From: Botryllus schlosseri
Taxonomy: Eukaryota
DNA: 64,000 bases
Assembly: GCA_051294905.1 (NCBI GenBank)
Contig: CM119372.1
Coordinates: 30,442,001-30,506,000 of the forward strand
Direction: 5' to 3'
Shown here piece by piece: positions 45,632 through 63,942 of this stretch. A program made the position numbers and the translations under genes. Each line of letters opens with the position of its first letter. The stretch's first letter is position 1. Below the pieces are notes generated by a model. That model was given only the letters and a program-made list of their open reading frames with translations. It was not told the origin of the DNA and searched no databases.

Positions 45632-45766
45632 CTCGAGAAGAAAAATGAGAACAGTCCATTTGATTTACCGTTATCAGATTTGAATGTCTCAATGAGTTTA
45701 CCGTTGGGAATTAACGCGCCAAAAGTAGTTATTTAAACACCACTACGAGTGAGCGGGACATGAGAA

Positions 45767-46922: not shown

Positions 46923-47000
46923 ATTGATTCTAAATTAATATAGAAAACACAATATAGTTATTATTCAGTGAAAACATGAATCACCGCACGAGAAAATAGA

Positions 47001-47354: not shown

Positions 47355-47420
47355 CTCGTTATATTGAAGAACTGAAATATTTATAAGAATGGGAGCTTTT
47401 ATAGCTGTGTAGGATGCGAT

Positions 47421-48031: not shown

Positions 48032-49621
48032 ATGTCTTTGCAAGTTGAAGTAATTATGGATGATGATAGTCAGCAGTTGCCAAGCAACCAATCAACCCGA
48101 GAAAGCAGTGACCATGCATTGAGTGTAGAAATTCCGAATCATATGAAATGTGATCAAATGGATAAAGATGATGAGGAACTCGTCGTTATGGATCGATACT
48201 TTAGACCCATAACGAAGATCCCATCTGCTAAAGAAGTTCTTCTGAAATCTTTGAGCGAAGAAGAATTTCGCGAACGCGTTGTCATACGTCAGATATGTCC
48301 CGCATTCAAAACTGATTCATCCCCATCAAAACAACAGCCTAATGACATCGAGCTAATTAGCAACGAGACCCAACTTAAGGATCAATTGATACCTCTGAGT
48401 CAATCAACACCAGTAGGTGAACAACCCGTTGAGACAGTGACTAGCGATCCGTCCCCTTCTGTCAATCATCAAGCTTCGGGACAAGCAGTAGGCAATCCCG
48501 ACACGGAAATGGATTTGTCTCTTGGTGCGGAGGCGATTGCCGAAAGTAGCGAGGCGCTAGGTGAAATTTCTCGTGATAGCAATGAGATCGCGAAGCAAAT
48601 CCTACTGCGACGTATAGAGAAGAGCACATCGCAAGTTACAGAGCAACCTACTTTTAGTGAGCTTGTCGCCGATTCCACTCATATCTCAAGTGGTTTTTCC
48701 GACTCTAATGTTGGTTCTATACCAAAGCCGAATATACCATCATCGCCAGATTCGTCAATAAGGATCTATCCTAGATATTGGATCCGACATGATCGCCCGG
48801 TCATTAACCCACCGCAATGGCATATAGGTGACACTACCAAAGCAGAACAGAAGTATGATGAGAAGAATCGCGTATTCATGCGTTGGCTAGTTGGATTTAG
48901 AGAGGCGACAGAAATACATGATGGTTATCTCATGTATAGATATCTGGAAGAAAATATTGCTGAAATACAATATGGCGGACTGAAACGGAGTCTCAATTTT
49001 CTTCGTGCCGCTCTGATTGTAGCTATCGGTGAAAGCTTGACTCATGAAAAATTACTTGCTCCACACTTCTTTCTGGAAGGGGATTGCCTTTCTGGAAAGG
49101 AAGTATTGCACGAAATGCTTTTCGGTAGTGAAACAGCAAATTATTTGCTGTCGAGTTTGGAAAATTTGAATGCTTTCAAATATTATGATGCTACAAAATG
49201 TGTTTCTGTGTTTCCCAACTGCGGAACGCTTTTCTTTGAAAATACTGCTTTACAGGAAACAATTCTGACTATACATCGTACAGCAGTGCAATGTGAATAC
49301 GGGATTATTAATCCATCTTGCTGCTTCATGCTTTGTGATAAACAAAATGGCTCTGACTTGATGACTGTCAAACATCCTATATCATTCAGGGCTAAAACGG
49401 TCATTGTAAAATTTGGAAGGGGGATTTACGCACCTTCTCTGGCCAGTTTCAACAAACATGCCCGTCGTGATGTTCTGTTCGATTTAATAAAGAGAACTAA
49501 AACTTCAAATATTAAAGAAGTGAATGGCTGTGTTGAGAAGGATCCCTTGGCTCAAGTACTGTATCTCAGAGCATCTAGCTTCAGAACCAGAAAAGAAAAA
49601 GCTGATAATGATAGTCTTTGA
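48032..49621 (+). CDS. Hypothetical protein: acidic disordered N-half, possible degenerate SF3/D5-like NTPase C-half
   Basis: Long clean ORF; FFLEGDCLSGKEVLHEMLFG resembles an SF3 Walker A context. Confidence 0.65.
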   Translation: MSLQVEVIMDDDSQQLPSNQSTRESSDHALSVEIPNHMKCDQMDKDDEELVVMDRYFRPITKIPSAKEVLLKSLSEEEFRERVVIRQICPAFKTDSSPSKQQPNDIELISNETQLKDQLIPLSQSTPVGEQPVETVTSDPSPSVNHQASGQAVGNPDTEMDLSLGAEAIAESSEALGEISRDSNEIAKQILLRRIEKSTSQVTEQPTFSELVADSTHISSGFSDSNVGSIPKPNIPSSPDSSIRIYPRYWIRHDRPVINPPQWHIGDTTKAEQKYDEKNRVFMRWLVGFREATEIHDGYLMYRYLEENIAEIQYGGLKRSLNFLRAALIVAIGESLTHEKLLAPHFFLEGDCLSGKEVLHEMLFGSETANYLLSSLENLNAFKYYDATKCVSVFPNCGTLFFENTALQETILTIHRTAVQCEYGIINPSCCFMLCDKQNGSDLMTVKHPISFRAKTVIVKFGRGIYAPSLASFNKHARRDVLFDLIKRTKTSNIKEVNGCVEKDPLAQVLYLRASSFRTRKEKADNDSL

Positions 49622-49783
49622 ATAATATGTTTTGCTTGTACGATTGTTATTTGCATGAACGATTGTTACCAATTCGAATTTTGTTTGCACCTTGACATTA
49701 TGACTGAAAAAAACTTGGCTGATGTATATATTATTTGCATGAACGATTGTCACTAATTCGAATTTTGTTTGCAGCTTAACATT

Positions 49784-50194
49784 ATGAATGATAACTTAGC
49801 CGATATAGCTGCATCCACCACTCAGAGAGACATGACACAAATTAGCGATATGTCGGCCTTCTATCAAAGTCTAATGGATCCACAGGAACCTTCACGAAAG
49901 CGTCCTCGTCAAGATATTGGTTCTTACTTCGAACACATGACGGATGATCATTTGAAAATGCAAGCGATGTGGAACCGCCTTATTTCGATGGAAGGATTCG
50001 AACAAGACTGGACAAAAAATTTTCTTGTCATTGCAAAAAACGTGATCAAAGATATCGAAAAACTGTTGTGTGACGATAAAACAGACTCGAATATTCGTGA
50101 TACTGAGATTGCTAGATTGGACAGAATTAAGTTCATGTTTCTGTACGGTTTAAACCAATCTAAATTGCGCTTGAGATATAATTTCGTTTTCTAG
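49784..50194 (+). CDS. Hypothetical protein with RKRPR NLS-like motif
   Basis: Clean 136-aa ORF preceded by an acceptor-like TTTGTTTGCAG. Confidence 0.55.
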   Translation: MNDNLADIAASTTQRDMTQISDMSAFYQSLMDPQEPSRKRPRQDIGSYFEHMTDDHLKMQAMWNRLISMEGFEQDWTKNFLVIAKNVIKDIEKLLCDDKTDSNIRDTEIARLDRIKFMFLYGLNQSKLRLRYNFVF

Positions 50195-50374
50195 TAAGTG
50201 AAATTGTGCTTGTTTTACAGATATAGAGTAAATATAGGTAATATTTTTCAATACTTTGTTGACACACGACTTTACGACTGGATACCGTATCATACAAGCG
50301 CAAACGGTAAGCAAAAACTGCGATTGAAATAAGCTTCTCAATTTCTAATGTTCTATGTTTTACAGATAGCATAA

Positions 50375-53300
50375 ATGACTCTACGCAGGCGATATTTGGA
50401 TCGAGATTGGATCGTCGACGAATCCTTGGGCTTTGAAGATGCCGCCGTCGAAGTAATTGAAGAGCACTACGATTCGATCATTGACTCAACGTGGACTTCG
50501 AGAAATCGCGTGCGACATATAGTCAATATTCGGATGATTGAACGAGATCCCGCTGACATTCACGCGCGTATCGCAAGTATATACCCGCAACGATTTAGAC
50601 AATTTAAAATAAATTATGGCTTTGGGTATCTACTATATAATCGTGAGTCTGAGCGATATACGTATTTTCACCCCCAATCATCTCAAGCTGTCCTCGATGT
50701 CCCAAGAACTATCATATCGCGTGAAGATTTTGATTCGTTTAGAAATGCAATTGATTTATCGGCCGGTTACGATTATGCGAATCGAGTCAGACCGGACACA
50801 AAATTTGTTTGTTCGGAGGTGCTACACATTACTTTATTCCTGTATGAAATGGAAAGACCCTTACTTAGCGGAGGTGTTGTCTCAGAAGAAATGGAAAGAT
50901 TATCCAAATGTAAATTTATCAGAGTTTTCATTCGTAATCGTAAAGGAGTACCATATACAGATAATCTCTGCCTGTTTCGATGCCTATCATTTAGTTTAAT
51001 TAAAAAACTTGACGAAAGTCATGTTTCTCAATTGACTACCCAATTTGAAAATCGTTACGGAATCTCAGCTGTTAATGGTATATCCCTCGAGCAACTATCG
51101 AAAGTGGAAGCATGTTTTAACGTTAGAATATTACTTTACGAAAAACGGGAACAAACCACGGTCTTGCGACGAACTTCCAATGCACCTGGACTCACAATTC
51201 ATATTCACATGTTTGAAAATCACTGTTGCTTAATATCGAACATAGAGATTTATACGTCTACTTTTATGTGTGATTCGTGTAAAACATTCTTTACCTTGAA
51301 TGCTAGTTTGAAACGACATATTGAAAATCATTGTAATTCTTCGAAAAGGTATCGATACGGTTCTGGTGTTTATCGTCCTAAAGCGACGGTGTTTGAAGAT
51401 TTGGAAAATGAAGGTATATTTGTTAGTGAAGAAAAACGTTTTTACAAATTCAGAATTTGCTTTGACTTTGAGAGTCTCTTAGTAAAAGAAAATCTCAAGT
51501 CCGATACACCCAAGGTAAACTTTACCAGTAAACATGTCCCGCTCTCAGTCTCACTGTGTGATAATGTCACGAACGAAACAACTACATTTATTTCCAATGG
51601 GAACCCGCGTGATCTAATTAAAGAAATGGTTGATAAGCTTCATGAAATTCAAGAAATTGCGTCTTCGCAAATGCGTGCTATATATGACACCGAGTTGACT
51701 ACTCTTCGCGACTTGATTGAGGAACGTAAAGTGATTGATCCGATTAAAACGCGATCGTACCTGGAGTTGTTGTATCATCGCTTTCAAACGTGGTTAGATC
51801 AAATACCCGTAATCGGCTTCAACTCGGCTCGCTATGATTTAAATCTGTGTAAAAAATATTTGATCGCTCTTTTGCGAGAGGAGAGCGGCTTTTTTGTATT
51901 GAAGCGAAACAGCAGTTATCTCACTATCTCCACAAATAAATTGAAATTTCTAGATATATCTCTGTTCCTCGCTCCGGGATATAGCCTGGATGCGTATTTG
52001 AAAGTGTACGGTGATGGAGTAAACAATAAATTTTACTTTCCATATGAATATATGACGCATATTGATAAATTGAAAGAGACATCGCTACCGCCACACGATA
52101 GCTTTTATAGTAGTCTTCGTGGGCATAATATTACAGCTGAACAATACCAAGAATGCGTCAATACTTGGAAGCGTCTCGATATGAAAACAATGAGGGATTT
52201 TTTAAAATACTACAATGAATGTGATGTGGTCGGCTTTCTCGTCGCGGTAAATAACAACTTCGACTTTTATAAAAAAACTGGGGATTGACATGTTCAAAAA
52301 TCACGTCAGCTTACCGAGTATAGCTAATCGACTTATGTTCGATCAAAGCTGTGAAATCGCTTTATTCAATAAAGCCAATGCCGATCTCCATCACACTGTA
52401 ATTAATAACTTAATTGGTGGATTGGCACAAATTACAAACAGGTATGCAATGGCAGACGAGACCAAAATTCGCATTTTGAAGTATGGAGACGCAGCCAAAG
52501 ACGTGAAATCTATAGTAGGATATGATTGCAACGCATTATACTTGCACGCCATTGATCTCAATATGCCAACTGGATATGTCACCCGTTGGCTGTATGATGA
52601 AGGGAAACAGAAATTTCATAGAAAACCGACTTATCCATCCATGATCGAACTCGAGTGGTTAACTTATCAAAGCATTGTTCGCGGTATTCCGATTCGTCAC
52701 GCTTGGAACGGTCCGCAAGTTAAACTCGGAGCCCGTAGAATTAGCGTTGATGGATACTCAGCAGACCGGAAGTTAATATTCAACATGGACGGCTGTTGGT
52801 GGCATAATTGTATAAAATGTTATCCTTGTAATCAAAATATTAATCATAATCGACGCATTAAAACCGAAGAAACCACCGCCTATTTTGAAGGCCTAGGATA
52901 TCAGGTCATTCGAGTGCGCGAATGTGAATGGAAAGCAATGAAGCGCGATCCAGACATTGCGCGCCTCGTTGCACATTTACAAAGGAATGTGACAAAAGAA
53001 TATTTACTCTCGCAAGAACAAATACTCGATCGAGTCGTTAACAATCGCTTTTTCGGTGCGATAGAATGCGACGCGCACTGCCCAGATCTTTTGAAATCTA
53101 AGTTTGAAGAGTTACCGCCTTTCTTTAAGCACATCGAAATTAATGAATGTGATATCGGTCCGCATATGGCTCAATACGCAAGGGAAAATAAAGTCAAGTT
53201 TCCGAAAAAAGCGCTCGCGTCCAGTTATTTCATCGAAAAGCAATTGGTTACTACCGATTTGTTGAGTTGGTATTTGCGTCACGGAATGGTGGTCACGCGT

Positions 53301-54245
53301 GTTTACCAAGCTTTGGAATATGAGCCTAAGAGAGTATTTCGCAACTTCGTAGATCGCGTAACAACGCTACGGCGTAAAGGTGACGTCGTTCCTAGAGACC
53401 GTGCACTTGAAATACAGGCTTTAACCTTTAAAATGGTTGGAAATTCAGCGTTCGGAACGACTATACAAAATCCAGCCAAATATAAAAATCACAAATATGT
53501 GACTCGCGATGAAGTTCAAGCGCTCATCAAAAAACCGAATTTTATCGACGCCGATGAAATTGACTCGGACTTAATTGAAGTAACCTCTCGGCCCGATACG
53601 ACTCGCCTTGATCAACCCGTCATCGTAGGGTTCTTCATATTTAATCACAGTAAGCAACGGATGTTGTCGTTCATGTATGACTTCCTCCACGTGTACATAA
53701 ACGATTGCGATCAATTTCATCTTGAACTTGACACCGACAGCTGTTACCTTGCGATATCAGCTGATTCTATCTACTCATTGATCATCCCTTCAAAGCGTAA
53801 AGAGTTCTTTGAAGTTCATGATCAGTGGTTGGTTCAAAGGGCGTGCGTTAAGCATAAAACAGACTTCGAGAGGGACCCAGTCACTTTCAAAATCGATGAA
53901 GCGTGCTGTATCGCTGCTCATAATTACTCTAAGCGAACACCGGGTTTGTTTAAAGTAGAATGGAGTGGACGGGGGTTTGTAGGCCTCAATTCAAAAACCT
54001 ACTATTGCTCGGGTGATACAGATAAATATTCCTCAAAAGGTTTGAGTAAAACGGCCTGCAAAACTTTCAAAGATTTCAAAGGTGTATTGCAAAACCGTTC
54101 TATATCCGGTGGATATAACTCCGGCTTCCGCTGCTTTCAGGGAGAAATATTCACATATCATCAATATCGTTCCGCTTTATCATACGGTTACTATAAAAGA
54201 ATTGTATTGAGTGATGGGATTCATACTGTACCGCTTGCGTTGTAA
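50375..54245 (+). CDS. pPolB of element 2, split by a 1-nt insertion in an A7 run (52271-52277)
   Basis: Removing one A gives YKKLGIDMF, matching YKTLGIDMF of element 1. All Exo and Pol motifs, the Vsr-like insert, Zn finger and an N-terminal terminal-protein-like region are present. Confidence 0.95.
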
Positions 54246-54276
54246 TAAAATGTTGACTGTTTTGTAATAAAAAAAA

Positions 54277-54897
54277 ATGGAGCGTGCACGTGTCTTAAAT
54301 TCTCCGTTCAGGATGATTATAGCTGGAACTTCGAGCTGTGGTAAAACATGTTTTGCCTATCGACTTGTGCAAAATGCCAAGAAGATCATCGCGCCTTATC
54401 CAAGGAAGATTATTTGGCTGTACAATAATTATCAGCCGTTATACGATAAAATGAAGGGTGTGAAATTCCACCAAGGTCTAGACGAGTTAGAACATTTACA
54501 GCAGGGTGGTAATGGACATACTCTGATAATACTAGACGACATGATGACGGAAGCACAACAAGCGAGGGACCTATTCATACGTCATTCCCATCATAATAAT
54601 GTCTCAGTAATCCTATTAGTCCAGAACATATTTCACCGAGGTGGTGGTTTTCGTGACGTCACTCTCAGCGCTAGCTATATTGTGGTGTTTAAAAATCCAC
54701 GTGACGTTTCACAAATACGTTACCTTTCACGTCAAATGTTCCCGGACAATCCTACTATGCTTACAGAAGCATACAAAAGAGCAACTCGCGAACCTTATTC
54801 ATATATTGCCATTGATTTAACCCAAGAGACACCGGAAAAGTATCGACTTCGTACCAACATATTTCCGGACGAACGCATGACTGTGTATTTGGAATAA
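54277..54897 (+). CDS. Packaging ATPase
   Basis: GTSSCGKT Walker A, LIILDD Walker B; homolog of 3106..3723. Confidence 0.93.
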   Translation: MERARVLNSPFRMIIAGTSSCGKTCFAYRLVQNAKKIIAPYPRKIIWLYNNYQPLYDKMKGVKFHQGLDELEHLQQGGNGHTLIILDDMMTEAQQARDLFIRHSHHNNVSVILLVQNIFHRGGGFRDVTLSASYIVVFKNPRDVSQIRYLSRQMFPDNPTMLTEAYKRATREPYSYIAIDLTQETPEKYRLRTNIFPDERMTVYLE

Positions 54898-54932
54898 ATA
54901 GCGCGCTGCTCGAACGATAATCATCATTCGGG

Positions 54933-55343
54933 ATGGCTAAGGACGCGCGAAGACTCATTTTGAAAAAACGTTTAAAAGATCATCTTACCAAATTGAAAAC
55001 TTTACGGAGGGCTAAAAACCCCGAACGTATTCAGTTATTGAAGCATAAGGAATTTGTCGCTAGTGTGTGCGAGTGTCTTCGAAACCTGGTGTCGGGCGAT
55101 GTACCTATTTCTAACGCAAGAAAATCTAAATTGAAAAAGCACAAATCCAGTATACGGAAGGTCCTGTGTTGCAAAACTCAAAAAGGCAGGCGCAAAGTTT
55201 TGCAAAAGGGTGGCTTTCTTTCGGGTAAATACGTGTAACTTTAATTCAATACTGTATCTAACGTTATTCCGTTCCTAGCCATTTTGAGTGCCGCTATTCC
55301 GATACTGGGAAGCCTCTTGGGCGGACTGACGAGAAATGCGTGA
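54933..55343 (+). CDS. Spliced small basic protein (exons 54933-55224, 55279-55343)
   Basis: GTAAAT donor 55225, CTAAC 55258, AG 55278; product ends GGFLS-AILSAAIPILGSLLGGLTRNA*. Confidence 0.75.
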
Positions 55344-55800
55344 GCTGTATTTTCCACCGCTACTAACAAAAGATGGATACGAAAGGAAATTTGACAAACA
55401 TATTGCCAAAATCAGAGACTCGGATTTGACTCGCGTGCAAAAACTAGCGCTTTACAAACACGGTATCAATGTCTTGAGAAACCTAAGAAAGAATGACGCG
55501 GCGATAAAAGCGCTCGCAAACGCTTCGTCACTCGACGATAAAAACGCGTCGCCGCCCGTCATTAAAGCAGACACAGCGCGCGCGCCACCATCTGATGACA
55601 CAAACGCGACGCCGGGGCCCCCGCACGCGTTTAATTGGAGCGTTACTAAACAGGAGGGAGATACTCCAAAGAAGAAAAAACCCAAGAAAAAAGCAAAGAA
55701 AAAGGTCGACCTCAAACCTCCGCTTAACTGGAAAGAACTCGATACTCCGCGTCAACAAAAGCCCAATCAACGCTACTTTGGAAAGCTATGGACAAACTAG
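55336..55800 (+). CDS. Conserved hypothetical basic protein
   Basis: Homolog of 4159..4497. Confidence 0.75.
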   Translation: MRELYFPPLLTKDGYERKFDKHIAKIRDSDLTRVQKLALYKHGINVLRNLRKNDAAIKALANASSLDDKNASPPVIKADTARAPPSDDTNATPGPPHAFNWSVTKQEGDTPKKKKPKKKAKKKVDLKPPLNWKELDTPRQQKPNQRYFGKLWTN

Positions 55801-56792
55801 ACTACTTCGATCCCAAAAAACCCAATTCTTATAGGGGTGCTTACCTACAGAAAGACAGCGAGTGGTTGAAGGGACAAGATAGTTATACCTATCACTTTCC
55901 CATTCGAAAAAGATTTAAACGTCGCCAAGTTGTTGTGTCAGGGATCGGAGCGCAGTTTCAAAGCGATTTAATCGACGTACAGTCTATTTCAAAATACAAT
56001 CGTGGATTTAGATATATTATTCTTATTATTGATGTTTTCTCCAAGTATGTGTGGATGATTCCGATTAAAAATAAATCGAGTGACAACATGATATCTGCTT
56101 TCAAAAAAGTTTTCAAAGAGAGCCTTCCATTAGTGCTACAGACAGACAGAGGTACAGAATACACGAGTCGAGCTTTTCAGAATTTTCTCAGAAAAAACAA
56201 GGTGCGGTACTTTTACACGAAAAGCGAATTGAAATCTTCGATTGCGGAAAGGGCTATCCGTAGTTTCCGTCAAATCTTCTACCGCTATTTCACGAAAAAT
56301 AACACCAGCAATTATATCGATGTGCTAGATGATATGGTCTATTCGTACAATCACACCAGACACCGCTCGTTAGGGATCCCTCCTAGTGAAGTTAATAGAC
56401 ATAATCAAGAAAGCATTTGGCAAAAAATGTATGGATTTCGCGACTCCAAACTACCCACTTTAGCGGTCGGGACCCCTGTACGCATCTCGAAAATTCGCAA
56501 TCTGTTTGAGAAGTCTAGTCGACCCAACTGGCAACCCGAGATATTTTACATTGTCAAAGCCATGAAAGGAGATCCGCCAACCTATCGCTTACGTGATTAC
56601 AATAACGAAATAATTGACGGACAATTTTACAGACAAGAAATTCAACCCGTTACTGAACCGCAAAAATGGCAAGTCGAAAAGATTATAAAGAGGCGACGGC
56701 GTGGTAAACGTAGTCAGTTTTTAGTGAAGTGGTTGAATTATGGACCGGAATTCAATACCTGGGTCGATCAAAAAGATATCGTCGAACCGTAA
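55788..56792 (+). CDS. Integrase with chromodomain
   Basis: QSDL, QTDRGTEY, AERAIR; WQVEKII..FLVKWLNY..NTWV. Confidence 0.95.
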   Translation: MDKLDYFDPKKPNSYRGAYLQKDSEWLKGQDSYTYHFPIRKRFKRRQVVVSGIGAQFQSDLIDVQSISKYNRGFRYIILIIDVFSKYVWMIPIKNKSSDNMISAFKKVFKESLPLVLQTDRGTEYTSRAFQNFLRKNKVRYFYTKSELKSSIAERAIRSFRQIFYRYFTKNNTSNYIDVLDDMVYSYNHTRHRSLGIPPSEVNRHNQESIWQKMYGFRDSKLPTLAVGTPVRISKIRNLFEKSSRPNWQPEIFYIVKAMKGDPPTYRLRDYNNEIIDGQFYRQEIQPVTEPQKWQVEKIIKRRRRGKRSQFLVKWLNYGPEFNTWVDQKDIVEP

Positions 56793-56952
56793 CTTTTATC
56801 AATTCATTGCTCAAGTTATAATTATACTGCTCATCGTGAGTTTTTCGCTGTATAATTTGAGTGTCGTGCAAGACAACAAAGAGCTTTGGGTGTCGCTGTT
56901 ATCTTCGTGTGTGGGATATATGTTACCGGCTCCAAAGATACCCAAACTATGA
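56740..56952 (+). CDS. Small two-TM protein
   Basis: Homolog of 5437..5646. Confidence 0.7.
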   Translation: MDRNSIPGSIKKISSNRNFYQFIAQVIIILLIVSFSLYNLSVVQDNKELWVSLLSSCVGYMLPAPKIPKL

Positions 56953-57779
56953 GTTATATTACGTTATTTTCCAATGCCTCCATGGACAGGTTTCCACAAA
57001 ATACAGCTGCGGTTTACACCAACGAACTAGACACCCCAAGAAATGTAGAAAGAAGCGAAGTCGCGTTGACTGAGATTGGCTTCCCAACCGATTTTAACGA
57101 ACGGATCGCAATCACAAATAACTACTACGGTTTCGACATTATGGGACCCAGTGAAGTCACAAGAAGATTGAAGTTCAAAATTGGTGAATATGAATCCGTA
57201 TATGACATGTTTAAATCATTGGAGAGCATTAATCCCGATGTGAAAGTCAAGTGTTTTCCTGAAAGTGATAACCTGACGGTTTCGATTCCACACAAAAACA
57301 TTGCAGCTAGTGCAAGACCGGGAGAGGATACGCGATATCGAATCGACACCAGAGAGTACGATTATACTGGAACACTTGAGCATCTAGAATTGGCGGTAGT
57401 TACCCTAACTCTCCTACGTTTCATATTGCCGAAGAATAGAGCAGACCTATCCGCATACTTTTTCACTGACAAGAGAATACATCTCAATTTTGATGTACGA
57501 CCCTTGTCGAAAATCGATTTCGTATACGTTCATTGCGACATCATTGAACCCCAAGAGTCTAGCGGTTCACTACAGCGTTTATTACGAGTTGTGAAAGTCG
57601 ATGGAGATAAGAAGGTGTTTTCAAAATATTACATAAAACCTTTCTTTCTTCCGCTAAGTATAAATAGATTGGAACGTGTAAAAATTTCCTTGCTGGATCA
57701 CAAAGGTGGTGAAATTCCGTTTCGAAGCGCTCCATCGAGCGCTGTACTTCAATTCCGAAAGCGCGGTATCGCACTATGA
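56949..57779 (+). CDS. Minor capsid protein 1
   Basis: Homolog of 5643..6452. Confidence 0.75.
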   Translation: MSYITLFSNASMDRFPQNTAAVYTNELDTPRNVERSEVALTEIGFPTDFNERIAITNNYYGFDIMGPSEVTRRLKFKIGEYESVYDMFKSLESINPDVKVKCFPESDNLTVSIPHKNIAASARPGEDTRYRIDTREYDYTGTLEHLELAVVTLTLLRFILPKNRADLSAYFFTDKRIHLNFDVRPLSKIDFVYVHCDIIEPQESSGSLQRLLRVVKVDGDKKVFSKYYIKPFFLPLSINRLERVKISLLDHKGGEIPFRSAPSSAVLQFRKRGIAL

Positions 57780-58525
57780 AATACATTCACATTAGCAGTT
57801 TGGAATCAGATTTTGTTCTCGAGCTAGCACGTCCGATTACAGGAAAATACGAACTGGGCCTAGCGGAGTTCTCGATTCGCAACGAGTTCCAACCTACTTT
57901 ACCTGCTTTCGACGCTCTGTTATGGCAATTTCAGGATGAGAAAACATCGCCTCTGATTCAAGTGGGAAGTAAAAATCATTATTTTTACCCCAAGGGTAAT
58001 TATTATGACTTCAAAAGTTTGATTGATAGAATCAATCGCACGCAGGACCAAGTATATATTAACCAGCTAGGAAGTTCTAGTGGTATGTTAGTCATTCCAC
58101 CTTACAAATCGGGTGCGTTTCCTAATTTCCTGAAGAATCCAACCGGAGTCAGAAATCCGGTTTTCGTGTATGGAAAGCTTAAGAAGAAAAAGCTGCTAGG
58201 AGGGAATTATTTAACTTCAGAGATCACTCTGAGGGATTCCATTACGCCTATCACCAATTTATTAATTTATACCGATCTCATTCGACCGCAATCAGTCGGC
58301 GACACGAAAGCTCCGCTATTACGAAACATCCCCATTACGAGTAGTGTCAATGAATATCAACATCATATATTCGAAAAAATATACTTTTTCCCTATGATTA
58401 CGGAAGACGCTCGTCGAATTCAGATTAGTATCAAAGACGATAAAGGTACGGGTATAAATCTGAAGGGGTCCATGATTGATATCACACTTGCTTTACGTCA
58501 TCATGAGAGCACATTACTGTTGTGA
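57776..58525 (+). CDS. Minor capsid protein 2
   Basis: Homolog of 6449..7171. Confidence 0.75.
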   Translation: MKYIHISSLESDFVLELARPITGKYELGLAEFSIRNEFQPTLPAFDALLWQFQDEKTSPLIQVGSKNHYFYPKGNYYDFKSLIDRINRTQDQVYINQLGSSSGMLVIPPYKSGAFPNFLKNPTGVRNPVFVYGKLKKKKLLGGNYLTSEITLRDSITPITNLLIYTDLIRPQSVGDTKAPLLRNIPITSSVNEYQHHIFEKIYFFPMITEDARRIQISIKDDKGTGINLKGSMIDITLALRHHESTLLL

Positions 58526-58871
58526 TCGCGATGCCTTTCAACAATACTATCGTGTGCAAAGTGGTAATGGCATAAACTATTTTCGAGGACGAGTGCAAAG
58601 AGGACACGGTTTAGGAAATCTCTTTCGTAGTTTGGGACGAAGTGTTGTACCATTGATATCAAAAGGGGCGAAAGCTCTCGGCAAACAACTACTCCATACA
58701 GGAGCAGAAGTAGCTTCTGACGTATTGCGTGGACAAAACGTCGGTGAAAGCTTCAAAATAAGAGGAAAACAAGCAGCTAGCAAAGCTCTTGACAACTTCC
58801 TAGGCAAGAGAAAGGCACCTAGAAAAAAGACCACGAAACGGAAAAAGCGGCGACGGGACATTTTCGATTAA
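58503..58871 (+). CDS. Basic core/membrane-active protein (QRGHGLG)
   Basis: Homolog of 7149..7520. Confidence 0.7.
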   Translation: MRAHYCCDRDAFQQYYRVQSGNGINYFRGRVQRGHGLGNLFRSLGRSVVPLISKGAKALGKQLLHTGAEVASDVLRGQNVGESFKIRGKQAASKALDNFLGKRKAPRKKTTKRKKRRRDIFD

Positions 58872-58921
58872 ATAGAACTCTCCCTACTTTATTTTTTCAT
58901 TAGCTAGCAGACTCGCGAAAG

Positions 58922-60199
58922 ATGACGGAGCTAATTCACGCGAAATCTGCCGAAGGCGTACATCCTAGCTTGGATCTTTTTCAACTCCCACCTACCCAAA
59001 CAAGCGTGGAGAAGAAACGGATCATTAAGATTCCACCTGTGTCGGACAACGCAAGCGTGATTATTTACCGCTATGAAGGCTGTGACGATTTTATTGATTT
59101 AAGCGAATCCTATTTTTTATTTCGCTTGAAACTATTGAAAGGCGATGCGGATCTAGCTGCCACGGACAGCATTGGAGTTGTGAATAACATTCTTGATTCT
59201 CTAATTTCTCAACTTCACATCAAAGTCGGGAACCATACCCTGAAACAAGACGTGAAGCTACAATGTTATTCAGCCTACTTACACTATCTGTTCACACCTC
59301 ACGACGTGCAAGAGACAACGCTTCTTACACAAAGATGGGTCAAGGACACAGAGAAGCAATTAGATGATTCGGGCCTAGGCAATGATGCGGCTAACAAAGG
59401 TCATAAGGCGAGAAATTTGCCGTATGCCGGGAGCAAAGTCGTTGAAATTCGCGGTAAAATACATCATGGGTTGTGTTTGCAAGACCGCTATATTTTGGAC
59501 GAGGTTCCGTTAGAGTTCGAATTAACATTGAATCCGAAAAGTTTCTTTCTGTTTGGAGCCGCTACCAGCAATTTCAAAATCATCAAAAAAGAATTGCACC
59601 TATGTGGAGTGCGGGTAACCGAAGATGTAAAATCTGCCTTGATGGTAGACGCACCGGCTAGGTATCCCTTTATGGACATGAAGCTGCTGACTCGAACTTT
59701 TGCGGCTAACACCACTCAAATCGATATTGGTAATCTGTATTCGGGAACCCTGCCGACACGTTTGATTATAGCAATGGTGAAAACCGAGGCATTCCAAGGA
59801 GCATTAGATAAGAACCCATATAATTTTATTCATAATAAAATGAATCGGGTTGAATTGAAAGTAAATGGTTTCCTTATGCCAGAGGGTGGCTACGAACTTG
59901 ATTTTGAAAACAATCATTATTCCGAGGCCTACCTAAATCTCATTCAATCTATGGGTGCCATCGAACGACAAAAAGGCTTGATTTCACCTTCCGAGTTCGC
60001 AAATGGATACACGCTCCTGGCGTATAATTTGCGAGGTGACGATTTAGATGACTGCTTCGAGCTGCAGAAAAGTGGAACGATCAGTCTTCGAATCACCTTT
60101 CCTGCGGCAGGTGTTGAGAGCGAAACGACACTGCTGTGCTTTATGGAATTTCAAAAAATACTGGAAATAAGCCAAGCTCGCACGGTGACCGTGATATGA
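58922..60199 (+). CDS. Major capsid protein
   Basis: 425 aa, colinear with 7570..8847. Confidence 0.88.
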   Translation: MTELIHAKSAEGVHPSLDLFQLPPTQTSVEKKRIIKIPPVSDNASVIIYRYEGCDDFIDLSESYFLFRLKLLKGDADLAATDSIGVVNNILDSLISQLHIKVGNHTLKQDVKLQCYSAYLHYLFTPHDVQETTLLTQRWVKDTEKQLDDSGLGNDAANKGHKARNLPYAGSKVVEIRGKIHHGLCLQDRYILDEVPLEFELTLNPKSFFLFGAATSNFKIIKKELHLCGVRVTEDVKSALMVDAPARYPFMDMKLLTRTFAANTTQIDIGNLYSGTLPTRLIIAMVKTEAFQGALDKNPYNFIHNKMNRVELKVNGFLMPEGGYELDFENNHYSEAYLNLIQSMGAIERQKGLISPSEFANGYTLLAYNLRGDDLDDCFELQKSGTISLRITFPAAGVESETTLLCFMEFQKILEISQARTVTVI

Positions 60200-60657
60200 A
60201 CGGACAAGAAATAGATGAAATATTGTATAGTTACCATGCTACGAAACAACACTATCTAGGGAATTTCCCTATTGATCAACTCCCTCAGCGCCCAAAACCT
60301 CCTTATTCAATTGTGATCAATTATGATGAAAGTCACAAGGAAGGTAGTCACTGGGTTTGCATATATGCTGATCAATATGAAACCCATTTTCACGATAGTC
60401 TGGGTATCACTCCATTCAGGATTGAGATTGCGAGTTTCCTTGATCCCGAAAATTATACTAGCTCAATAAAACCATTACAGCATGAAAGGTCAGACGCTTG
60501 TGGAGCTCATGCAATTGCATATATCGTGAAACGCTCTACTGGTATGAGCACACTACAGTATTTGGATCACTTCGGTGATGATCGAAAAGAGAACGACGAT
60601 ATCGTAGTGGACTTCGTTAGAATCTTGAAATGGGAGCAACTAGTTTCACCATCATAG
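60196..60657 (+). CDS. Adenain-like protease
   Basis: GSHW, HDSLG, LQ..SDACG; ATGA overlap with the MCP stop. Confidence 0.92.
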   Translation: MNGQEIDEILYSYHATKQHYLGNFPIDQLPQRPKPPYSIVINYDESHKEGSHWVCIYADQYETHFHDSLGITPFRIEIASFLDPENYTSSIKPLQHERSDACGAHAIAYIVKRSTGMSTLQYLDHFGDDRKENDDIVVDFVRILKWEQLVSPS

Positions 60658-60686
60658 AATACTTTGGAGATGATGAGAAGGCCTAC

Positions 60687-60947
60687 ATGAAAGTCCAAGG
60701 AAAAATTATTGTCATGAATGCAAATCGTATTCATAGAATTTCTTTCGAGCCGTTTCACATACGCATTTACCCGCATGATAACGAAGTTACAATTTTCCGC
60801 GGGTCTGATTGGATCCCAGTGCGTTTTCCTAAAAATTGTATGTATATAGATGTGTTGTCGAAGCATAGAATTATTCGTCGTAACCGCGGTGAACTTGTCG
60901 TTTTTCGTAGACTAAAATTATGGGAATTTTTGAGAAATCGCTTTTAA
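60687..60947 (+). CDS. Orphan, beta-strand-rich
   Basis: Clean ORF followed by TAATAAA. Confidence 0.5.
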   Translation: MKVQGKIIVMNANRIHRISFEPFHIRIYPHDNEVTIFRGSDWIPVRFPKNCMYIDVLSKHRIIRRNRGELVVFRRLKLWEFLRNRF

Positions 60948-61014
60948 TAAATTCGTGTGTATTCATCGGAGTTATATATAAGTGGTTATTGCTCGGGATC
61001 TAGTCAGTGTCATC

Positions 61015-61755
61015 ATGAATGCGCTTATAGTATCGATGTGTTATCGCGGAAAGCCGCACCATGTCGAAAATGAAGGAACGTTACAAGACATTCAGATTAT
61101 GACAGATATCTTAGTACAGAAATTCAAATTCAAGCCTGAAGATATCAAAGTGTTGCGTGAAGAGCAAGCCACTCTTGGAAATTTTTCCAGAGAGCTTCAA
61201 ACGATGGCCGATAGTAGCGCCAAGATAAACTTCATATATTTCGTCGGTCACGGATTTTCATGTCCAAATAACACAAAAGAAAATGATCCTGAAGCTCGCG
61301 ATTCCGGATTTGTATTTTATGATAGGCATCTACTCGATGATGATATGTGTGAGCTATTAAAAAGCTTTCGTAAAGATACAAAAAACCTACTCATGTTTGC
61401 GCAGTGTTATAGTGGTAACTCTGCCGATTTGAAATTTCATTTACGAGAAGACGCTGCTTCGCAAGCACTCAAACGCAAACGAGACGTAAAATCCAAAACT
61501 GTTCTCATAAGTGCAGTTAGTGACGATCAAATCAGTTGGTGTTTTGAAGACGGTAGTGCTTTTGCAAAGAATTTCAGAACCGTCATACGTGAACACGACG
61601 AAATCAAATTCTTCGATCTTATGCGTAAATTGCGACAACTAGATAAGAGACAAAAGTGTTCGATATCATCAAGCTTCAAATTGGATGAACACGATCATCT
61701 CATTCGAAAAAGAAGTTTCAGTTGGATAAAATCTCAATGGAAGAAATCGAAATAA
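61015..61755 (+). CDS. Metacaspase-like cysteine protease (C14)
   Basis: ALIV..Y...GTLQDI..M...L, T..N, YFVGHG (His), D.DE-like loop, LLDDD, FAQCYSG..DL (Cys), ISAVSDDQ.S, GSAF, Q...SSS follow the metacaspase motif order. Confidence 0.8.
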   Translation: MNALIVSMCYRGKPHHVENEGTLQDIQIMTDILVQKFKFKPEDIKVLREEQATLGNFSRELQTMADSSAKINFIYFVGHGFSCPNNTKENDPEARDSGFVFYDRHLLDDDMCELLKSFRKDTKNLLMFAQCYSGNSADLKFHLREDAASQALKRKRDVKSKTVLISAVSDDQISWCFEDGSAFAKNFRTVIREHDEIKFFDLMRKLRQLDKRQKCSISSSFKLDEHDHLIRKRSFSWIKSQWKKSK

Positions 61756-61840
61756 TAACTATCGTTGCAACCGCGCTGTTATTTCTGGAATTCTTATTAT
61801 ATACGCTATTTTGCTGTGGAGAAGAATGTGAACGTAAATC

Positions 61841-62182
61841 ATGACTATGGCTCGCATTTGTATTGGTCCCCTACGCTTGAGTAGTAATGGAGATCGTAGC
61901 TATTATGAAAAAACAATTGTATTACCGAAAGTGAGATCTATCACTATTCCTTTCTCATGTGAAATAATGTATCGTACCAATAAGATCGTAGTGAAGAAAC
62001 TGCATGTTCCTCACTACGGTAAGATTGAATCTCCGACAATCACTGTCTGCAAAGACAAACATTACTGTTTACCGCGTACCTGTCCTATTCTTATAGAATT
62101 TAAAGGGAATGCGATCGTTGTAAAAAATATAATCGTATTCGAAGCGTTACACAACGCGCGATTTTATGATGCTTGTTACTAG
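61841..62182 (+). CDS. Orphan, beta-strand-rich
   Basis: Clean 113-aa ORF followed by AATAAA. Confidence 0.5.
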   Translation: MTMARICIGPLRLSSNGDRSYYEKTIVLPKVRSITIPFSCEIMYRTNKIVVKKLHVPHYGKIESPTITVCKDKHYCLPRTCPILIEFKGNAIVVKNIIVFEALHNARFYDACY

Positions 62183-62266
62183 TTTGATATGTCTGTAATA
62201 AAATCACAAAACAACTACGGATCCTCATTCGTGTTCTAGTCAGATACAGCATCAATAGAAAAGTCG

Positions 62267-62337
62267 TGGAGACTACGGGAATTGAACCCGTATCTTCTAT
62301 TTGCAAGACAGATACTCTACCATTGAGCTAAGTCCCC
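62267..62337 (-). tRNA. tRNA-Ala (anticodon UGC)
   Basis: GGGGACT TA GCTC AATGGTA GAGT A TCTGT CTTGCAA ATAGA AGAT ACGGG TTCAATT CCCGT AGTCTCC A: all four stems pair, G3:U70 alanine determinant, A73, A- and B-boxes, TTTT terminator 5 nt downstream, no encoded CCA. Confidence 0.93.
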
Positions 62338-62446
62338 ATTCAGACGAATAACAACGCAACCAGACGTTGATTTTTGTTATTTATTACAAGAACAATACGG
62401 AATGTATAATGCAATTCCACGCTACTCGCGGTGGATTAAAACAACA

Positions 62447-62926
62447 CTATTTTTCTTGCTGGGTGACTTGCGTATCTTCCATTGCATGTCTACGGGTATA
62501 TTGAGTAGCTAGTTGGAAATAACGTTCCTTATTTTTTAAATACATTTCCGCACTCTCTTGATCCATCGGATCATAAGGGTTTGGTGAAGCGAGCAATGAA
62601 CGTATTGATATCAGTAGAGTGGACGTTGTCATCGCTGGTGACCATTCCTTCTGTAAAATATCGACACATATGGTACCTTTACAGCTTACGTTAGGATGGA
62701 ATATCCGTGTTTCAAATCGCATTTTAGGAGGCTTGAATGGATACTCGGTAGAATATTCGATTGATAATCTGAACACACCACCTTCGTAGGGTGTTCCGTT
62801 TGGTCCTTGGATCGTTGCCCACCAACTATACATATTCTTTTCATCGAATGGTCCTGCTCGGATAGCTTCGTAAGCATTCTGCTTAAATTTTGCTTGTTCA
62901 TATATCAAACGCTTCAAAGCACGCAT
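62447..62926 (-). CDS. Ubiquitin-conjugating enzyme E2 (UBE2D/Ubc4-5-like), intronless
   Basis: MRALKRL, WWATIQGP.GTPYEGGVF, YPFKPPK, IFHPN..GTICVDIL (catalytic Cys), WSPA, PNP.DP; an upstream ATG at 62959 is also possible. Confidence 0.93.
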   Translation of the reverse strand: MRALKRLIYEQAKFKQNAYEAIRAGPFDEKNMYSWWATIQGPNGTPYEGGVFRLSIEYSTEYPFKPPKMRFETRIFHPNVSCKGTICVDILQKEWSPAMTTSTLLISIRSLLASPNPYDPMDQESAEMYLKNKERYFQLATQYTRRHAMEDTQVTQQEK

Positions 62927-63092
62927 GCCTATCGAATGATAGTATTCGAACTGTCGCACTTGCTTTCAAATAAATTATAATTCAATCTAATTATACATGT
63001 AAATAGAAATAGGTTACAGAATAATGAATGATATGATTAATGTATGAAATGACATGCGTCGCGCATTTCAAATCTACAACAAAAAAAAAATA

Positions 63093-63419
63093 TTAATGTA
63101 TGAGATGAGATGCGTCGCTCATTTCTAATCTGTAACAATTTTTCATGAATAGGCTGTTTAATTCCACGGCGGTTCCTTGTTTGATAGTAATACACTTTCC
63201 ATTTATGTGGACATCTTCCTCATGAATCTTCATTGATTTTTTTTCGTTGTCTTCGTCACGTATGATCACCCACGTATATCCTTTACGGCGTTTTATTATG
63301 AACTGCTGCTCCAATTTTATCGTCGCTACACCCGTTACTATTATACTCTTTGAAGTTTGGTCCATTGTAATATTTGTTGGAGATTCGAATTTGACATCGT
63401 TAATCACTATTCGTCCCAT
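63093..63419 (-). CDS. Orphan, beta-strand-rich
   Basis: Clean 108-aa ORF transcribed inward from the right terminal region. Confidence 0.5.
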   Translation of the reverse strand: MGRIVINDVKFESPTNITMDQTSKSIIVTGVATIKLEQQFIIKRRKGYTWVIIRDEDNEKKSMKIHEEDVHINGKCITIKQGTAVELNSLFMKNCYRLEMSDASHLIH

Positions 63420-63490
63420 CGTCGCTCAATTTCGTATTGAATGGCTTAGCATCAAATTTGTGACTTAAATAGTCGCCTAAACTTCTTCTA

Positions 63491-63942
63491 CAATCATTGT
63501 CAATACAATGATGATCACACCATCGCGGAATAAACATATATATATGATTGCAAACTTGTCACGTGATCAAAGCTATGTATGGTGCAATATCGCTAGGTTA
63601 TTACCCATTGTGCAATAACGGTCACACAACTCTTTCGCGCGCTTTTCTCTGTTTGATTTGAAATTCAAAAGTGGTCACGTGATTGGAGTGGGTCTAAATA
63701 CCCACTTTGACGCCTTAATCAAAACAACAGCAACGAACGCTAGGCGAGATGGGCAGAAGACTGCAAATCCTGAACAATGGAGGGTGTAACACCAGAACGA
63801 GCGAAAATATACTTCGAACATTTGGACAAGCACTGGGAGAGGAACTGGGATGGAGCTTGCGATGGGATGGCTGTATAGGAATAATTGGACTGTATATAGG
63901 AATAAGAATGATTTGTAGTGATGCTAAAAAAATATATAATTA
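63491..63942. repeat. Imperfect, block-shuffled inverted repeat of the left terminal region of element 2
   Basis: 63628-63683 = rc of 44933-44988; 63540-63597 ~ rc 45200-45255; 63491-63520 ~ rc 45042-45071; 63893-63942 ~ rc 45248-45297. Confidence 0.85.

What the first reader, a model, noticed from the sequence alone, without database searches (positions are those of the whole stretch)
61015..61755. Metacaspase-type protease inside an animal Polinton, with an altered specificity pocket
Seen: metacaspase motif order with the His-Cys dyad intact (VGHG, QCYSG), but the acidic residue two positions before the Cys (D-x-C-H-S-G) is replaced (A-Q-C-Y-S-G). Established: metacaspases are typical of fungi, plants, protists and bacteria and are not part of the standard metazoan repertoire, and that Asp helps define Arg/Lys specificity. 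Inference: cross-kingdom gene capture by a virus lineage, yielding a death-pathway protease with changed substrate preference and delivered into an animal germline.
Basis: partly seen in the sequence, partly recalled or inferred. Interest (0 to 1): 0.8.

Follow-up and report, generated by a model that had tools for sequence, protein, structure and literature searches.

The report
Metacaspase gene carried by tunicate Polinton
A virus-like Polinton element in a sea-squirt genome carries an intact, selectively maintained metacaspase-type protease gene, an enzyme class animals do not normally have, and its lineage has lost most of the acidic residues that normally set the enzyme's cleavage preference.

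Summary
Window 61015-61755 (+) is an intact 246-aa ORF that passes Pfam Peptidase_C14 (50 bits, cut-off 21). Its best solved relatives by sequence and by predicted fold (pLDDT 94) are metacaspases, not caspases or paracaspases. His79 and Cys131 and the four Ca2+-site aspartates are kept. The Asp two residues before the Cys is Ala. Two more of the four TbMCA2 S1-pocket residues and an acidic p10 residue are also replaced, in every close relative.

The gene lies inside a roughly 18.8-kb Polinton bounded by inverted repeats, between the capsid/protease genes and the right end, next to a UBE2D-like E2. The host is an ascidian. Four related contigs show the same gene order, dN/dS is about 0.1, and a TATA box and the start ATG are conserved. 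A second Polinton in the window lacks the gene.

The nearest outgroups sit on another Polinton-like contig and on giant-virus contigs, so this looks like a virus-world metacaspase. The donor is unresolved. Changed specificity and a cell-death role are inferences only.

I found no paper linking Polintons with metacaspases. Verdict: a real feature, a new variant of a known kind (viral metacaspases), of moderate to high interest.

The parts
44933..63683 (.). Polinton/Maverick copy 2: minimum extent between the outermost colinear inverted-repeat arms. True termini and target-site duplication were not resolved.
   Evidence: Inverted repeats 44933-44988 / 63628-63683 (56 nt, 98%) and 45041-45072 / 63490-63521. 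The gene content is listed in the parts below.
44929..45072 (.). Left terminal inverted-repeat region
63490..63683 (.). Right terminal inverted-repeat region
50375..54245 (+). Protein-primed DNA polymerase B gene. It is broken once (one change of reading frame) relative to the continuous ORF of copy 1.
   Evidence: Both pieces match the single 1024-aa ORF of copy 1 at 61-64% identity. Both also match the region of L006 that carries Pfam DNA_pol_B_2.
54277..54897 (+). A32-type DNA-packaging ATPase
   Evidence: Pfam Pox_A32, E=1.4e-10
55788..56792 (+). Retroviral-type (rve) integrase with a C-terminal chromodomain
   Evidence: Pfam rve 5e-13 and Chromo 4e-11
58922..60199 (+). Putative major capsid protein (425 aa). 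Assigned by position and size only.
   Evidence: 69% identical to the copy 1 ORF 7570-8847 and 73-88% to L001/L011. No Pfam or PHROG hit. The AF2 model was too poor to use (pLDDT 43.5).
60196..60657 (+). Putative adenain/Ulp1-like maturation cysteine protease (153 aa). Assigned by position and by a His...Asp...Gln...Cys motif order read from the sequence.
   Evidence: 61% identical to copy 1 and 56-82% to L001/L011. No profile hit.
60630..60947 (+). Conserved 105-aa ORF of unknown function, upstream of the C14 gene
   Evidence: 48-79% identical ORFs at the same position in L001, L002, L011 and L012
60975..60982 (+). TATA-box-like TATATAAG, about 40 nt upstream of the start codon
   Evidence: Conserved in the window, L011, L012 and L001. 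L015 has a TATAAAA-like motif in the same place.
61015..61755 (+). Metacaspase-type Peptidase_C14 gene (246 aa). Key residues: His79, Cys131; Ca2+-site Asp96, Asp108, Asp109, Asp138; pocket positions Thr22, Asp25, Val77, Ala129, Trp175, Cys176.
61841..62182 (+). Conserved 113-aa ORF of unknown function, downstream of the C14 gene
   Evidence: 69% identical ORF at the same position in L011 and L012
62447..62959 (-). UBE2D (UbcH5)-like ubiquitin-conjugating enzyme E2 (170 aa), with the HPN motif and catalytic Cys present. It lies inside the element.
   Evidence: Pfam UQ_con 1.7e-46. PDB UBE2D2 2.7e-46.
63093..63419 (-). 108-aa ORF of unknown function next to the right inverted repeat
   Evidence: No family hit.

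Best explanation
The ORF is an accessory gene of a Polinton (Maverick) lineage that lives in ascidian genomes. It encodes a minimal, prodomain-less metacaspase (MEROPS C14B type).

Shown:
- It belongs to the metacaspase family by sequence and by predicted fold.
- The His79/Cys131 dyad with its flanking glycines is kept.
- The four-aspartate site that binds Ca2+ in TbMCA2 is kept.
- It has its own TATA-box-like motif and a conserved start codon.
- It sits at a fixed place (capsid gene, protease, small ORF, C14, small ORF) in at least four related contigs.
- It evolves under purifying selection (dN/dS about 0.1).

Inferred: it is a Ca2+-activated cysteine endopeptidase made when the element is expressed, and it acts on host or element proteins rather than in capsid maturation, because the element already has its adenain-like protease. 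It lacks the N-terminal segment that covers the active site in TbMCA2 and the type II linker, so Ca2+ is probably its main control.

Inferred with less confidence: its P1 preference differs from the Arg/Lys preference of classical metacaspases. Three of the four TbMCA2 S1-pocket residues and a p10 acidic residue were replaced by Thr, Val, Ala and Cys throughout the clade, leaving a single Asp25 and a Trp175. The resulting pocket is less acidic and more hydrophobic. It might still take Arg in the way gingipain R does.

Together with the neighbouring UBE2D-like E2, the gene probably forms a small host-manipulation module (proteolysis plus ubiquitylation). Which host process it targets is unknown.
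For: - Family: Pfam PF00656, 50.4 bits against a cut-off of 21.4.
- PDB sequence hits with the single protein are AtMC4, AtMC9 and GSU0716 as the only significant hits (E<=5e-6); weaker, unrelated hits follow at E>=0.018.
- The clade profile A1 hits only metacaspases and GSU0716, at 3e-12 to 1e-7.
- The wider profile A2 gives Yca1 7e-73, TbMCA2 1e-59, MALT1 0.01 and caspase-1 0.08.
- Fold: AF2 pLDDT 94, pTM 0.90. Foldseek PDB top 29 are all metacaspases or GSU0716, with TMq up to 0.76. BFVD top hits are giant-virus (meta)caspases, TMq 0.79-0.86.
- Residues: dyad, Ca2+ tetrad and pocket substitutions by column counts, with the reference residues taken from PMC4357240.
- Part of the element: it lies inside the inverted repeats with ATPase, integrase and pPolB.
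- Same synteny in L001, L002, L011 and L012.
- Selection: dN/dS 0.10, 0.11 and 0.09 at dS 0.57-2.8.
- Promoter and start codon conserved.
- Host is an ascidian: MGAT2 at 21568-22893 has its best named hits in Styela clava, Clavelina, Ciona and Phallusia.
Against: - No activity, expression or substrate data exist.
- The pPolB of this copy is interrupted once, so this copy may be inactive, and selection was measured between elements, not on this copy.
- The loss of pocket residues that McLuskey et al. found important for TbMCA2 activity (as cited in PMC4357240) could mean reduced or no proteolysis.
- I could not inspect the model's coordinates, so the pocket description rests on alignment alone.
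- The link with the E2 is by adjacency in one copy. The related contigs end before that position.
- The capsid and protease assignments of the element are by position only.
Confidence: 0.7

Rival explanations
1. Canonical specificity is retained. The protein is an ordinary Arg/Lys-specific metacaspase. The substitutions at Cys-2 and the other pocket positions are tolerated because Asp25 alone, perhaps helped by the clade-specific Gln/Glu at Cys-1 or by Trp175, still binds a basic P1 side chain.
For: Asp25 (the Asp95 equivalent) is kept in all clade members. In gingipain R the only functional group hydrogen-bonding the P1 Arg is one Asp on the equivalent helix, with a Trp lid (PMC4357240). Cys-1 is Gln or Glu only in this clade.
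Against: The Cys-2 Asp is kept in 133 of 141 relatives, which implies strong constraint wherever the classical pocket is used. The clade also lost the p10 acidic residue and the Cys92 and Ser156 equivalents. Coordinated loss suggests a shifted function.
Confidence: 0.35
2. Pseudoprotease. The protein no longer cleaves substrates and acts as a scaffold, decoy or inhibitor, for example of host C14 proteases.
For: Three of the four residues reported as important for substrate binding or activity in TbMCA2 are replaced. Pseudo-variants of C14 proteins are known in bacteria (the title and abstract of PMC6426788, listed).
Against: His, Cys, both flanking Gly and the Ca2+ tetrad are invariant in all seven clade members down to 38% identity. 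Known pseudo-orthocaspases replace the dyad itself (PMC6426788 abstract).
Confidence: 0.12
3. It is not an element gene: either a host (tunicate) cellular gene or assembly contamination from a protist or giant virus that merely lies next to a Polinton.
For: The element's exact termini and target-site duplication were not found. The closest relatives are unnamed metagenome or SRA contigs.
Against: The gene is 1.7 kb or more inside the right inverted repeat. The same gene order with capsid and protease genes recurs in four independent contigs at 63-89% protein identity. The contig also carries a tunicate MGAT2 and a second Polinton. No NCBI- or UniRef-sourced animal protein appears among the close hits.
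Confidence: 0.03

Closest known systems
Giant-virus (Nucleocytoviricota) metacaspases, e.g. those of Fadolivirus, Clandestinovirus, Heterosigma akashiwo virus 01 and Imitervirales MAGs (Wilson 2017 and Moniruzzaman 2020, as cited in PMC10583209)
   Same: Virus-encoded, often about 250 aa and without a prodomain, with the same fold (TMq 0.79-0.86). Short stand-alone C14 genes on giant-virus-like contigs rank among the best non-clade sequence hits. Their role is equally unknown.
   Different: Only 24-28% identity. The giant-virus-like metagenome proteins examined here keep the classical pocket (Cys, Asp, Ser, Asp and the p10 Asp). The carrier here is an integrating Polinton of about 19 kb in an animal, not a giant virus of protists.
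Type I metacaspases with solved structures: yeast Yca1 (4F6O), Candida glabrata MCA1 (7QP0), Trypanosoma brucei MCA2 (4AF8)
   Same: Best structural and profile matches. Same p20-then-p10 order, His-Cys dyad, Ca2+-binding Asp tetrad and p10 Q-x-S motif.
   Different: No N-terminal prodomain. The S1 pocket keeps 1 of 4 TbMCA2 residues. About 20% identity.
Ascovirus executioner caspase (Spodoptera frugiperda ascovirus 1a; Bideshi 2005, as cited in PMC10583209)
   Same: A C14 protease encoded by a DNA virus of animals. It shows that viral C14 enzymes can reshape host cell death for transmission.
   Different: It is a true caspase (C14A), and only a weak structural match here (E=3e-5, TMq 0.54). 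No functional parallel has been demonstrated.
Gingipain R (C25) S1 pocket
   Same: A single Asp on the equivalent helix plus a Trp on the L5-equivalent loop. This resembles what is left in the Polinton protein (Asp25, Trp175) (PMC4357240).
   Different: A different clan CD family. The likeness is an analogy drawn from alignment positions, not from coordinates.
Canonical Polinton/Maverick gene set (Krupovic, Bamford and Koonin 2014, PMC4028283)
   Same: pPolB, rve integrase, A32-type ATPase, a capsid-size ORF followed by a small cysteine-protease ORF, and terminal inverted repeats.
   Different: It carries an extra right-end module (C14, E2 and small ORFs). The other Polinton in the same window does not have this module.

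Membership tests
Metacaspase (MEROPS C14B; Pfam PF00656) | Profile match above the curated threshold | tested here: met
   50.4 bits against a 21.4 cut-off, E=3.1e-13, covering residues 4-209
Metacaspase (MEROPS C14B; Pfam PF00656) | Catalytic His-Cys dyad in the G-H-G and C-x-S-G motifs | tested here: met
   His79 and Cys131. His is invariant in all 141 aligned relatives and Cys is present in 138 of 141.
Metacaspase (MEROPS C14B; Pfam PF00656) | Caspase-hemoglobinase fold closest to solved metacaspases | tested here: met
   AF2 pLDDT 94. Foldseek ranks 1-29 are metacaspases or GSU0716 (TMq 0.63-0.76); MALT1 0.52-0.57; caspase-7 0.58. This is a predicted structure, not a solved one.
Metacaspase (MEROPS C14B; Pfam PF00656) | Acidic S1 pocket (TbMCA2 Cys92, Asp95, Ser156, Asp211) | tested here: not met
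   Thr22, Asp25, Val77, Ala129: only one of four is kept. The p10 acidic residue is also lost.
Metacaspase (MEROPS C14B; Pfam PF00656) | Ca2+-binding aspartates (TbMCA2 Asp173, Asp189, Asp190, Asp220) | tested here: met
   Asp96, Asp108, Asp109, Asp138, mapped through the HMMER alignment to chain 4afr. Asp220 as the fourth ligand is from my own knowledge.
Metacaspase (MEROPS C14B; Pfam PF00656) | Cleavage after Arg/Lys | not testable with these tools
   No biochemical data
Metacaspase type I / type II / type III | N-terminal prodomain (I), long p20-p10 linker (II), or p10 before p20 (III) | tested here: not met
   The domain starts at residue 3. There are about 35 residues between Cys131 and the p10 Ser166, and the order is p20 then p10. 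It is a type I-like core without a prodomain.
Caspase (C14A) | Closest sequence and fold relatives are caspases; Q-A-C-x-G active-site pentapeptide | tested here: not met
   Caspase-1 E>=0.08 with profile A2 and absent with A1. The motif here is A-Q-C-Y-S-G.
Paracaspase | Closest relatives are MALT1-type; associated death or Ig domains | tested here: not met
   MALT1 E=0.01, covering only the first 90 profile positions. TMq 0.52-0.57. No extra domains.
Polinton/Maverick element | pPolB + rve integrase + packaging ATPase + capsid and protease genes | tested here: met
   ATPase and integrase by Pfam. pPolB by similarity to a Pfam DNA_pol_B_2 gene on L006. Capsid and protease are assigned by position only.
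Polinton/Maverick element | Terminal inverted repeats and a 6-bp target-site duplication | tested here: inconclusive
   Inverted repeats were found. Exact ends and a duplication could not be fixed.

The most novel reading that the evidence does not exclude
A lineage of animal Polintons has kept for a long time a metacaspase whose specificity pocket was rebuilt, so that it no longer follows the Arg/Lys rule that defines metacaspases. Together with a captured UBE2D-like E2, it serves as a virus-encoded effector that rewires host proteolysis or cell-fate pathways in an animal, giving tunicates a C14B activity that no metazoan encodes on its own.
Probability: 0.2. Interest if true: 0.8.

Novelty: new variant of a known kind. 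Interest (0 to 1): 0.6.

Why it matters
Animals are held to have caspases and paracaspases but no metacaspases. Here an intact, constrained metacaspase gene sits in an animal germline, carried by a virus-like element.

- It extends virus-encoded metacaspases from giant viruses of protists to Polintons/Mavericks of animals. I found no paper in the searchable library that links the two.
- It offers a natural experiment on C14 specificity. The lineage runs from a Polinton-borne relative with the classical acidic pocket (L006), through intermediates (P0009 with Glu at Cys-2), to the tunicate clade with Ala. The catalytic and Ca2+ machinery is untouched along the way.
- It shows that Polintons can carry host-manipulation cargo (a protease plus an E2). 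This bears on whether they behave as viruses rather than plain transposons.

Tried and rejected
- IMG/VR and JGI metagenome scans with the clade alignment A1 found no relatives. P0015 alone found nothing in IMG/VR.
- Capsid gene confirmation failed. There was no Pfam or PHROG hit, and the AF2 model from two sequences was too poor to search (pLDDT 43.5), so the last fold search was not used. The copy 1 pPolB ORF had no PDB sequence hit.
- Exact element termini and a target-site duplication could not be fixed. One 50-nt repeat (45247-45296 / 63893-63942) is not colinear with the other arms.
- The deep placement beyond P0009 and P0015 is unsupported. The next NJ neighbours include bacterial MAG 'caspase family' proteins, which I treat as possible long-branch attraction.
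- The species behind the SRA and ENA samples carrying the relatives could not be identified.
- Rejected readings: a caspase or paracaspase; a host gene; a second copy in the window (none).
I noticed this afterwards. Nothing was deleted, and the place is not repeated in the notes or in this report.
Full report
**1. Observation**

The window holds an uninterrupted ORF from the ATG at 61015 to the stop ending at 61755, on the + strand, encoding 246 aa. ORF listing starts it at a GTG at 60982. However, the ATG is invariant in five related loci, has an A at -3, and lies about 40 nt downstream of a conserved TATATAAG (60975-60982). I therefore take 61015 as the start. The quoted motifs VGHG and AQCYSG are there: His79 is codon 61249-61251 and Cys131 is codon 61405-61407.

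Pfam Peptidase_C14 matches residues 4-209 at 50.4 bits, against a gathering score of 21.4 (E=3.1e-13). In HMMER alignments to Arabidopsis metacaspase-4 the His and Cys align with the catalytic dyad, and the Asp two residues before the Cys aligns with Ala129.

**2. What the protein is**

Sequence comparisons with solved structures:
- The single protein finds Arabidopsis metacaspases 4 and 9 and Geobacter GSU0716 at E of about 1e-7 to 5e-6. Nothing else is significant; unrelated chains appear only at E of 0.018 or weaker.
- A profile of the protein and its four close relatives (A1) finds only metacaspases (AtMC4 3e-12, Yca1 2e-10, AtMC9, C. glabrata MCA1) and GSU0716.
- A 60-sequence profile (A2) gives Yca1 7e-73, TbMCA2 1e-59 and AtMC4 2e-60. 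MALT1 scores 0.01 and caspase-1 scores 0.08 or weaker.

An AlphaFold2 model built on A2 is confident (pLDDT 94, pTM 0.90). In Foldseek against the PDB:
- Ranks 1-29 are all metacaspases or GSU0716, with TMq up to 0.76.
- MALT1 reaches 0.52-0.57.
- Legumain reaches about 0.6.
- Caspase-7 reaches 0.58.

Against predicted viral structures, the best matches are giant-virus (meta)caspases: Fadolivirus 0.86, Clandestinovirus 0.84 and Heterosigma akashiwo virus 01 at 0.79. The last is itself only 249 aa.

The domain starts at residue 3, so there is no type I prodomain. There is no long type II linker, and p20 precedes p10. This is a minimal metacaspase core.

**3. Residues**

A review of clan CD structures (PMC4357240, read) lists the proposed TbMCA2 S1 pocket as Cys92, Asp95, Ser156 and Asp211. 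It lists the Ca2+ site as Asp173, Asp189, Asp190 and one further Asp. That this fourth residue is Asp220 is from my own knowledge.

I mapped these through the HMMER alignment to the TbMCA2 chain (index offset +20) and through column counts in a 141-sequence alignment.

| Site | TbMCA2 residue | Window protein | Outgroups | Polinton clade (7 sequences) |
|---|---|---|---|---|
| Ca2+ site | Asp173, Asp189, Asp190, Asp220 | Asp96, Asp108, Asp109, Asp138 | mostly Asp | kept (Asp96 column is His in one member) |
| S1 pocket | Asp95 | Asp25 | Asp in 132 of 134 | kept |
| S1 pocket | Cys92 | Thr22 | Cys in 115 | Thr |
| S1 pocket | Ser156 | Val77 | Ser in 124 | Val or Ile |
| S1 pocket | Asp211 | Ala129 | Asp in 133 of 134 | Ala in six, Ser in one |
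| p10, after Q-x-S-x | acidic residue | Cys176 | Asp/Glu in 117 of 134 | Cys, Val, Ser or His |
| p10, preceding position | not mapped | Trp175 | varied (Ala most common, 50 of 134) | Trp in five of seven |
| Cys-1 | not mapped | Gln130 | small residues | Gln or Glu |

The whole pocket has been remodelled toward a less acidic, more hydrophobic one, while the catalytic and Ca2+ machinery is untouched.

**4. Where it sits**

The region from 44.9 to 63.7 kb is a Polinton/Maverick. Its features are:
- inverted repeats at 44933-44988 / 63628-63683 (98%) and 45041-45072 / 63490-63521;
- an A32-type ATPase at 54277-54897;
- an rve integrase with a chromodomain at 55788-56792;
- a protein-primed polymerase gene at 50375-54245, whose product matches the Pfam DNA_pol_B_2 gene of locus L006;
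- a 425-aa capsid-size ORF at 58922-60199, overlapping by 4 nt a 153-aa ORF at 60196-60657 with a His...Asp...Gln...Cys motif order. This ORF is the expected adenain-like protease, assigned by position only.

The polymerase gene of this copy is interrupted once by a change of frame, relative to the continuous 1024-aa ORF of the other copy. All other genes listed are intact.

To the right of the protease come:
- a 105-aa ORF;
- the C14 gene;
- a 113-aa ORF;
- a UBE2D-like E2 on the minus strand at 62447-62959 (Pfam 1.7e-46; PDB UBE2D2 2.7e-46);
- a 108-aa ORF;
- the right repeat.

Exact termini and a target-site duplication could not be fixed.

A second, divergent Polinton occupies window 1 to about 9300. 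It shows 45-71% protein identity and about 70% nucleotide identity. It ends after its protease gene without a C14 gene. The gene is therefore lineage-specific cargo, not core.

**5. Host**

An intronless MGAT2 gene at 21568-22893 (-) has its best named relatives in ascidians:
- Styela clava, 61% identity;
- Clavelina lepadiformis, 47%;
- Phallusia mammillata, 43%;
- Ciona intestinalis, 42%.

The window is therefore from a tunicate, which is an animal. The species itself is not identified.

**6. Relatives and selection**

The word-indexed search found only four close relatives, at 89, 63, 51 and 50% identity. All come from SRA or ENA assemblies and none has a name.

Contigs L011/L012 (P0001) and L001/L002 (P0002) show the same order: capsid C-terminus, protease, small ORF, C14, small ORF. 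P0001 and P0002 occur in the same sample, so at least two diverged element lineages carry the gene.

dN/dS is 0.10 (window against P0001, dS 0.57), 0.11 (window against P0002) and 0.09 (P0001 against P0002).

The exhaustive profile search found 4675 proteins at E<=1e-3 but only six below 1e-30. The clade is therefore small and isolated. Beyond it lie:
- P0007 (38% identity, a Botany Bay metagenome contig, Ala at Cys-2);
- P0009 (31%, Glu at Cys-2);
- P0015 (27%, classical Asp).

P0015 lies on L006 next to an integrase fragment and a pPolB that match the window's own, so L006 is another Polinton-like element.

In a neighbour-joining tree (139 sequences, 231 columns, 200 bootstraps):
- the core clade plus P0007 has 199/200;
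- adding P0009 gives 154/200;
- adding P0015 gives 92/200.

Other high-ranking hits are short stand-alone C14 genes on dense, intronless contigs. These contigs carry TFIIS, Rpb6, thioredoxin, ubiquitin, RING, Arf and patatin genes (L003, L004, L007, L009). One of these proteins, P0028, has relatives at 38-42% identity on IMG/VR giant-virus MAGs and on 130-239-kb viral contigs. Long MMETSP protist proteins also rank high.

The window protein is 24-28% identical to these proteins. The donor is unresolved. What can be said is that the nearest company is viral.

**7. How it most likely works**

Shown: family, fold, dyad, Ca2+ site, its own promoter-like motif and start codon, a fixed place in the element, and purifying selection.

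Inferred: it is a Ca2+-activated cysteine endopeptidase produced when the element is expressed. It has no prodomain or linker to hold it in check. It acts on host or element proteins other than the capsid-maturation substrates, which are served by the adenain-like protease.

Inferred with lower confidence: its P1 preference is altered. A single remaining Asp plus a Trp recalls the gingipain R pocket, in which one Asp and a Trp lid bind Arg (PMC4357240). Retained Arg preference is therefore a serious rival.

A pseudoprotease is less likely, because every catalytic feature is invariant down to 38% identity.

The adjacent E2 suggests a small host-manipulation module. In two giant-virus-like contigs the C14 gene also lies within a few genes of UQ_con, ubiquitin or RING genes, but that may be coincidence.

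A cell-death role is only an analogy. An ascovirus caspase contributes to a modified apoptosis that promotes virus transmission, and coccolithoviruses recruit host metacaspases (PMC10583209).

**8. Comparison and novelty**

Metacaspases encoded by giant viruses are known, and their role is still called unclear (PMC10583209). Full-text searches found:
- no paper holding both 'polinton' and 'metacaspase';
- nothing relevant among six papers holding 'polinton' and 'caspase';
- no link with Mavericks, polinton-like viruses or virophages.

That library omits much subscription literature, so absence is not proof.

I rate this a new variant of a known kind: a viral metacaspase, on a new carrier (an animal Polinton), with a lineage-wide rebuilt specificity pocket.

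**9. Limits and a slip**

- I could not see model coordinates, identify the host species or the source organisms of the related contigs, search the rest of the host genome, or confirm the capsid gene.
- In some searches my script labels carried the ORF starts and lengths of the two polymerase pieces, which indirectly reveal where that gene is interrupted. I declare this as a slip. It is not repeated here.
Consensus lines printed by the alignment tools were not used.

Noticed in passing
window 28-9299: A second, divergent Polinton copy, cut by the window start. It has a continuous 1024-aa polymerase ORF, ATPase, integrase with chromodomain, a capsid-size ORF and a protease. Protein identity to copy 2 is 45-71%. 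It has no C14 or E2 module after the protease.
   Followed up: partly
window 62447-62959 (-): An intact UBE2D/UbcH5-like E2 gene inside the Polinton, two genes from the metacaspase. Giant-virus-like contigs L007 and L009 also have UQ_con, ubiquitin or RING genes within a few genes of their C14 gene.
   Followed up: partly
window 60630-60947, 61841-62182, 63093-63419: Three small ORFs (105, 113 and 108 aa) of unknown function flank the C14 and E2 genes. The first two are conserved in position and sequence in related contigs. They show no detectable similarity to each other.
   Followed up: partly
window 38898-39815 and 44596-44645: A 177/354-bp tandem array (5.2 / 2.6 copies). A 31-50-nt piece of the unit recurs in inverted orientation just outside the left end of the Polinton.
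   Followed up: no
window 10849-11750 (repeated small ORFs extend back to about 10064): A long-period (433 bp by TRF) tandem repeat directly downstream of Polinton copy 1. It carries a repeated 45-47-aa ORF on the minus strand.
   Followed up: no
window 40370-43952 (-): An ORF with a Ulp1-type C48 protease domain plus a PHD finger (309 aa), next to a 798-aa ORF with no Pfam hit. This may be another mobile element.
   Followed up: no
window 21568-22893 (-): An intronless MGAT2 gene (441 aa). Its closest named relatives are ascidian (Styela clava 61%), which identifies the host as a tunicate.
   Followed up: yes
window 45247-45296 and 63893-63942: A 50-nt inverted pair (98%) that is not colinear with the other inverted-repeat arms: inner on the left, outer on the right. 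The element's ends may be rearranged or longer than the minimum given.
   Followed up: partly
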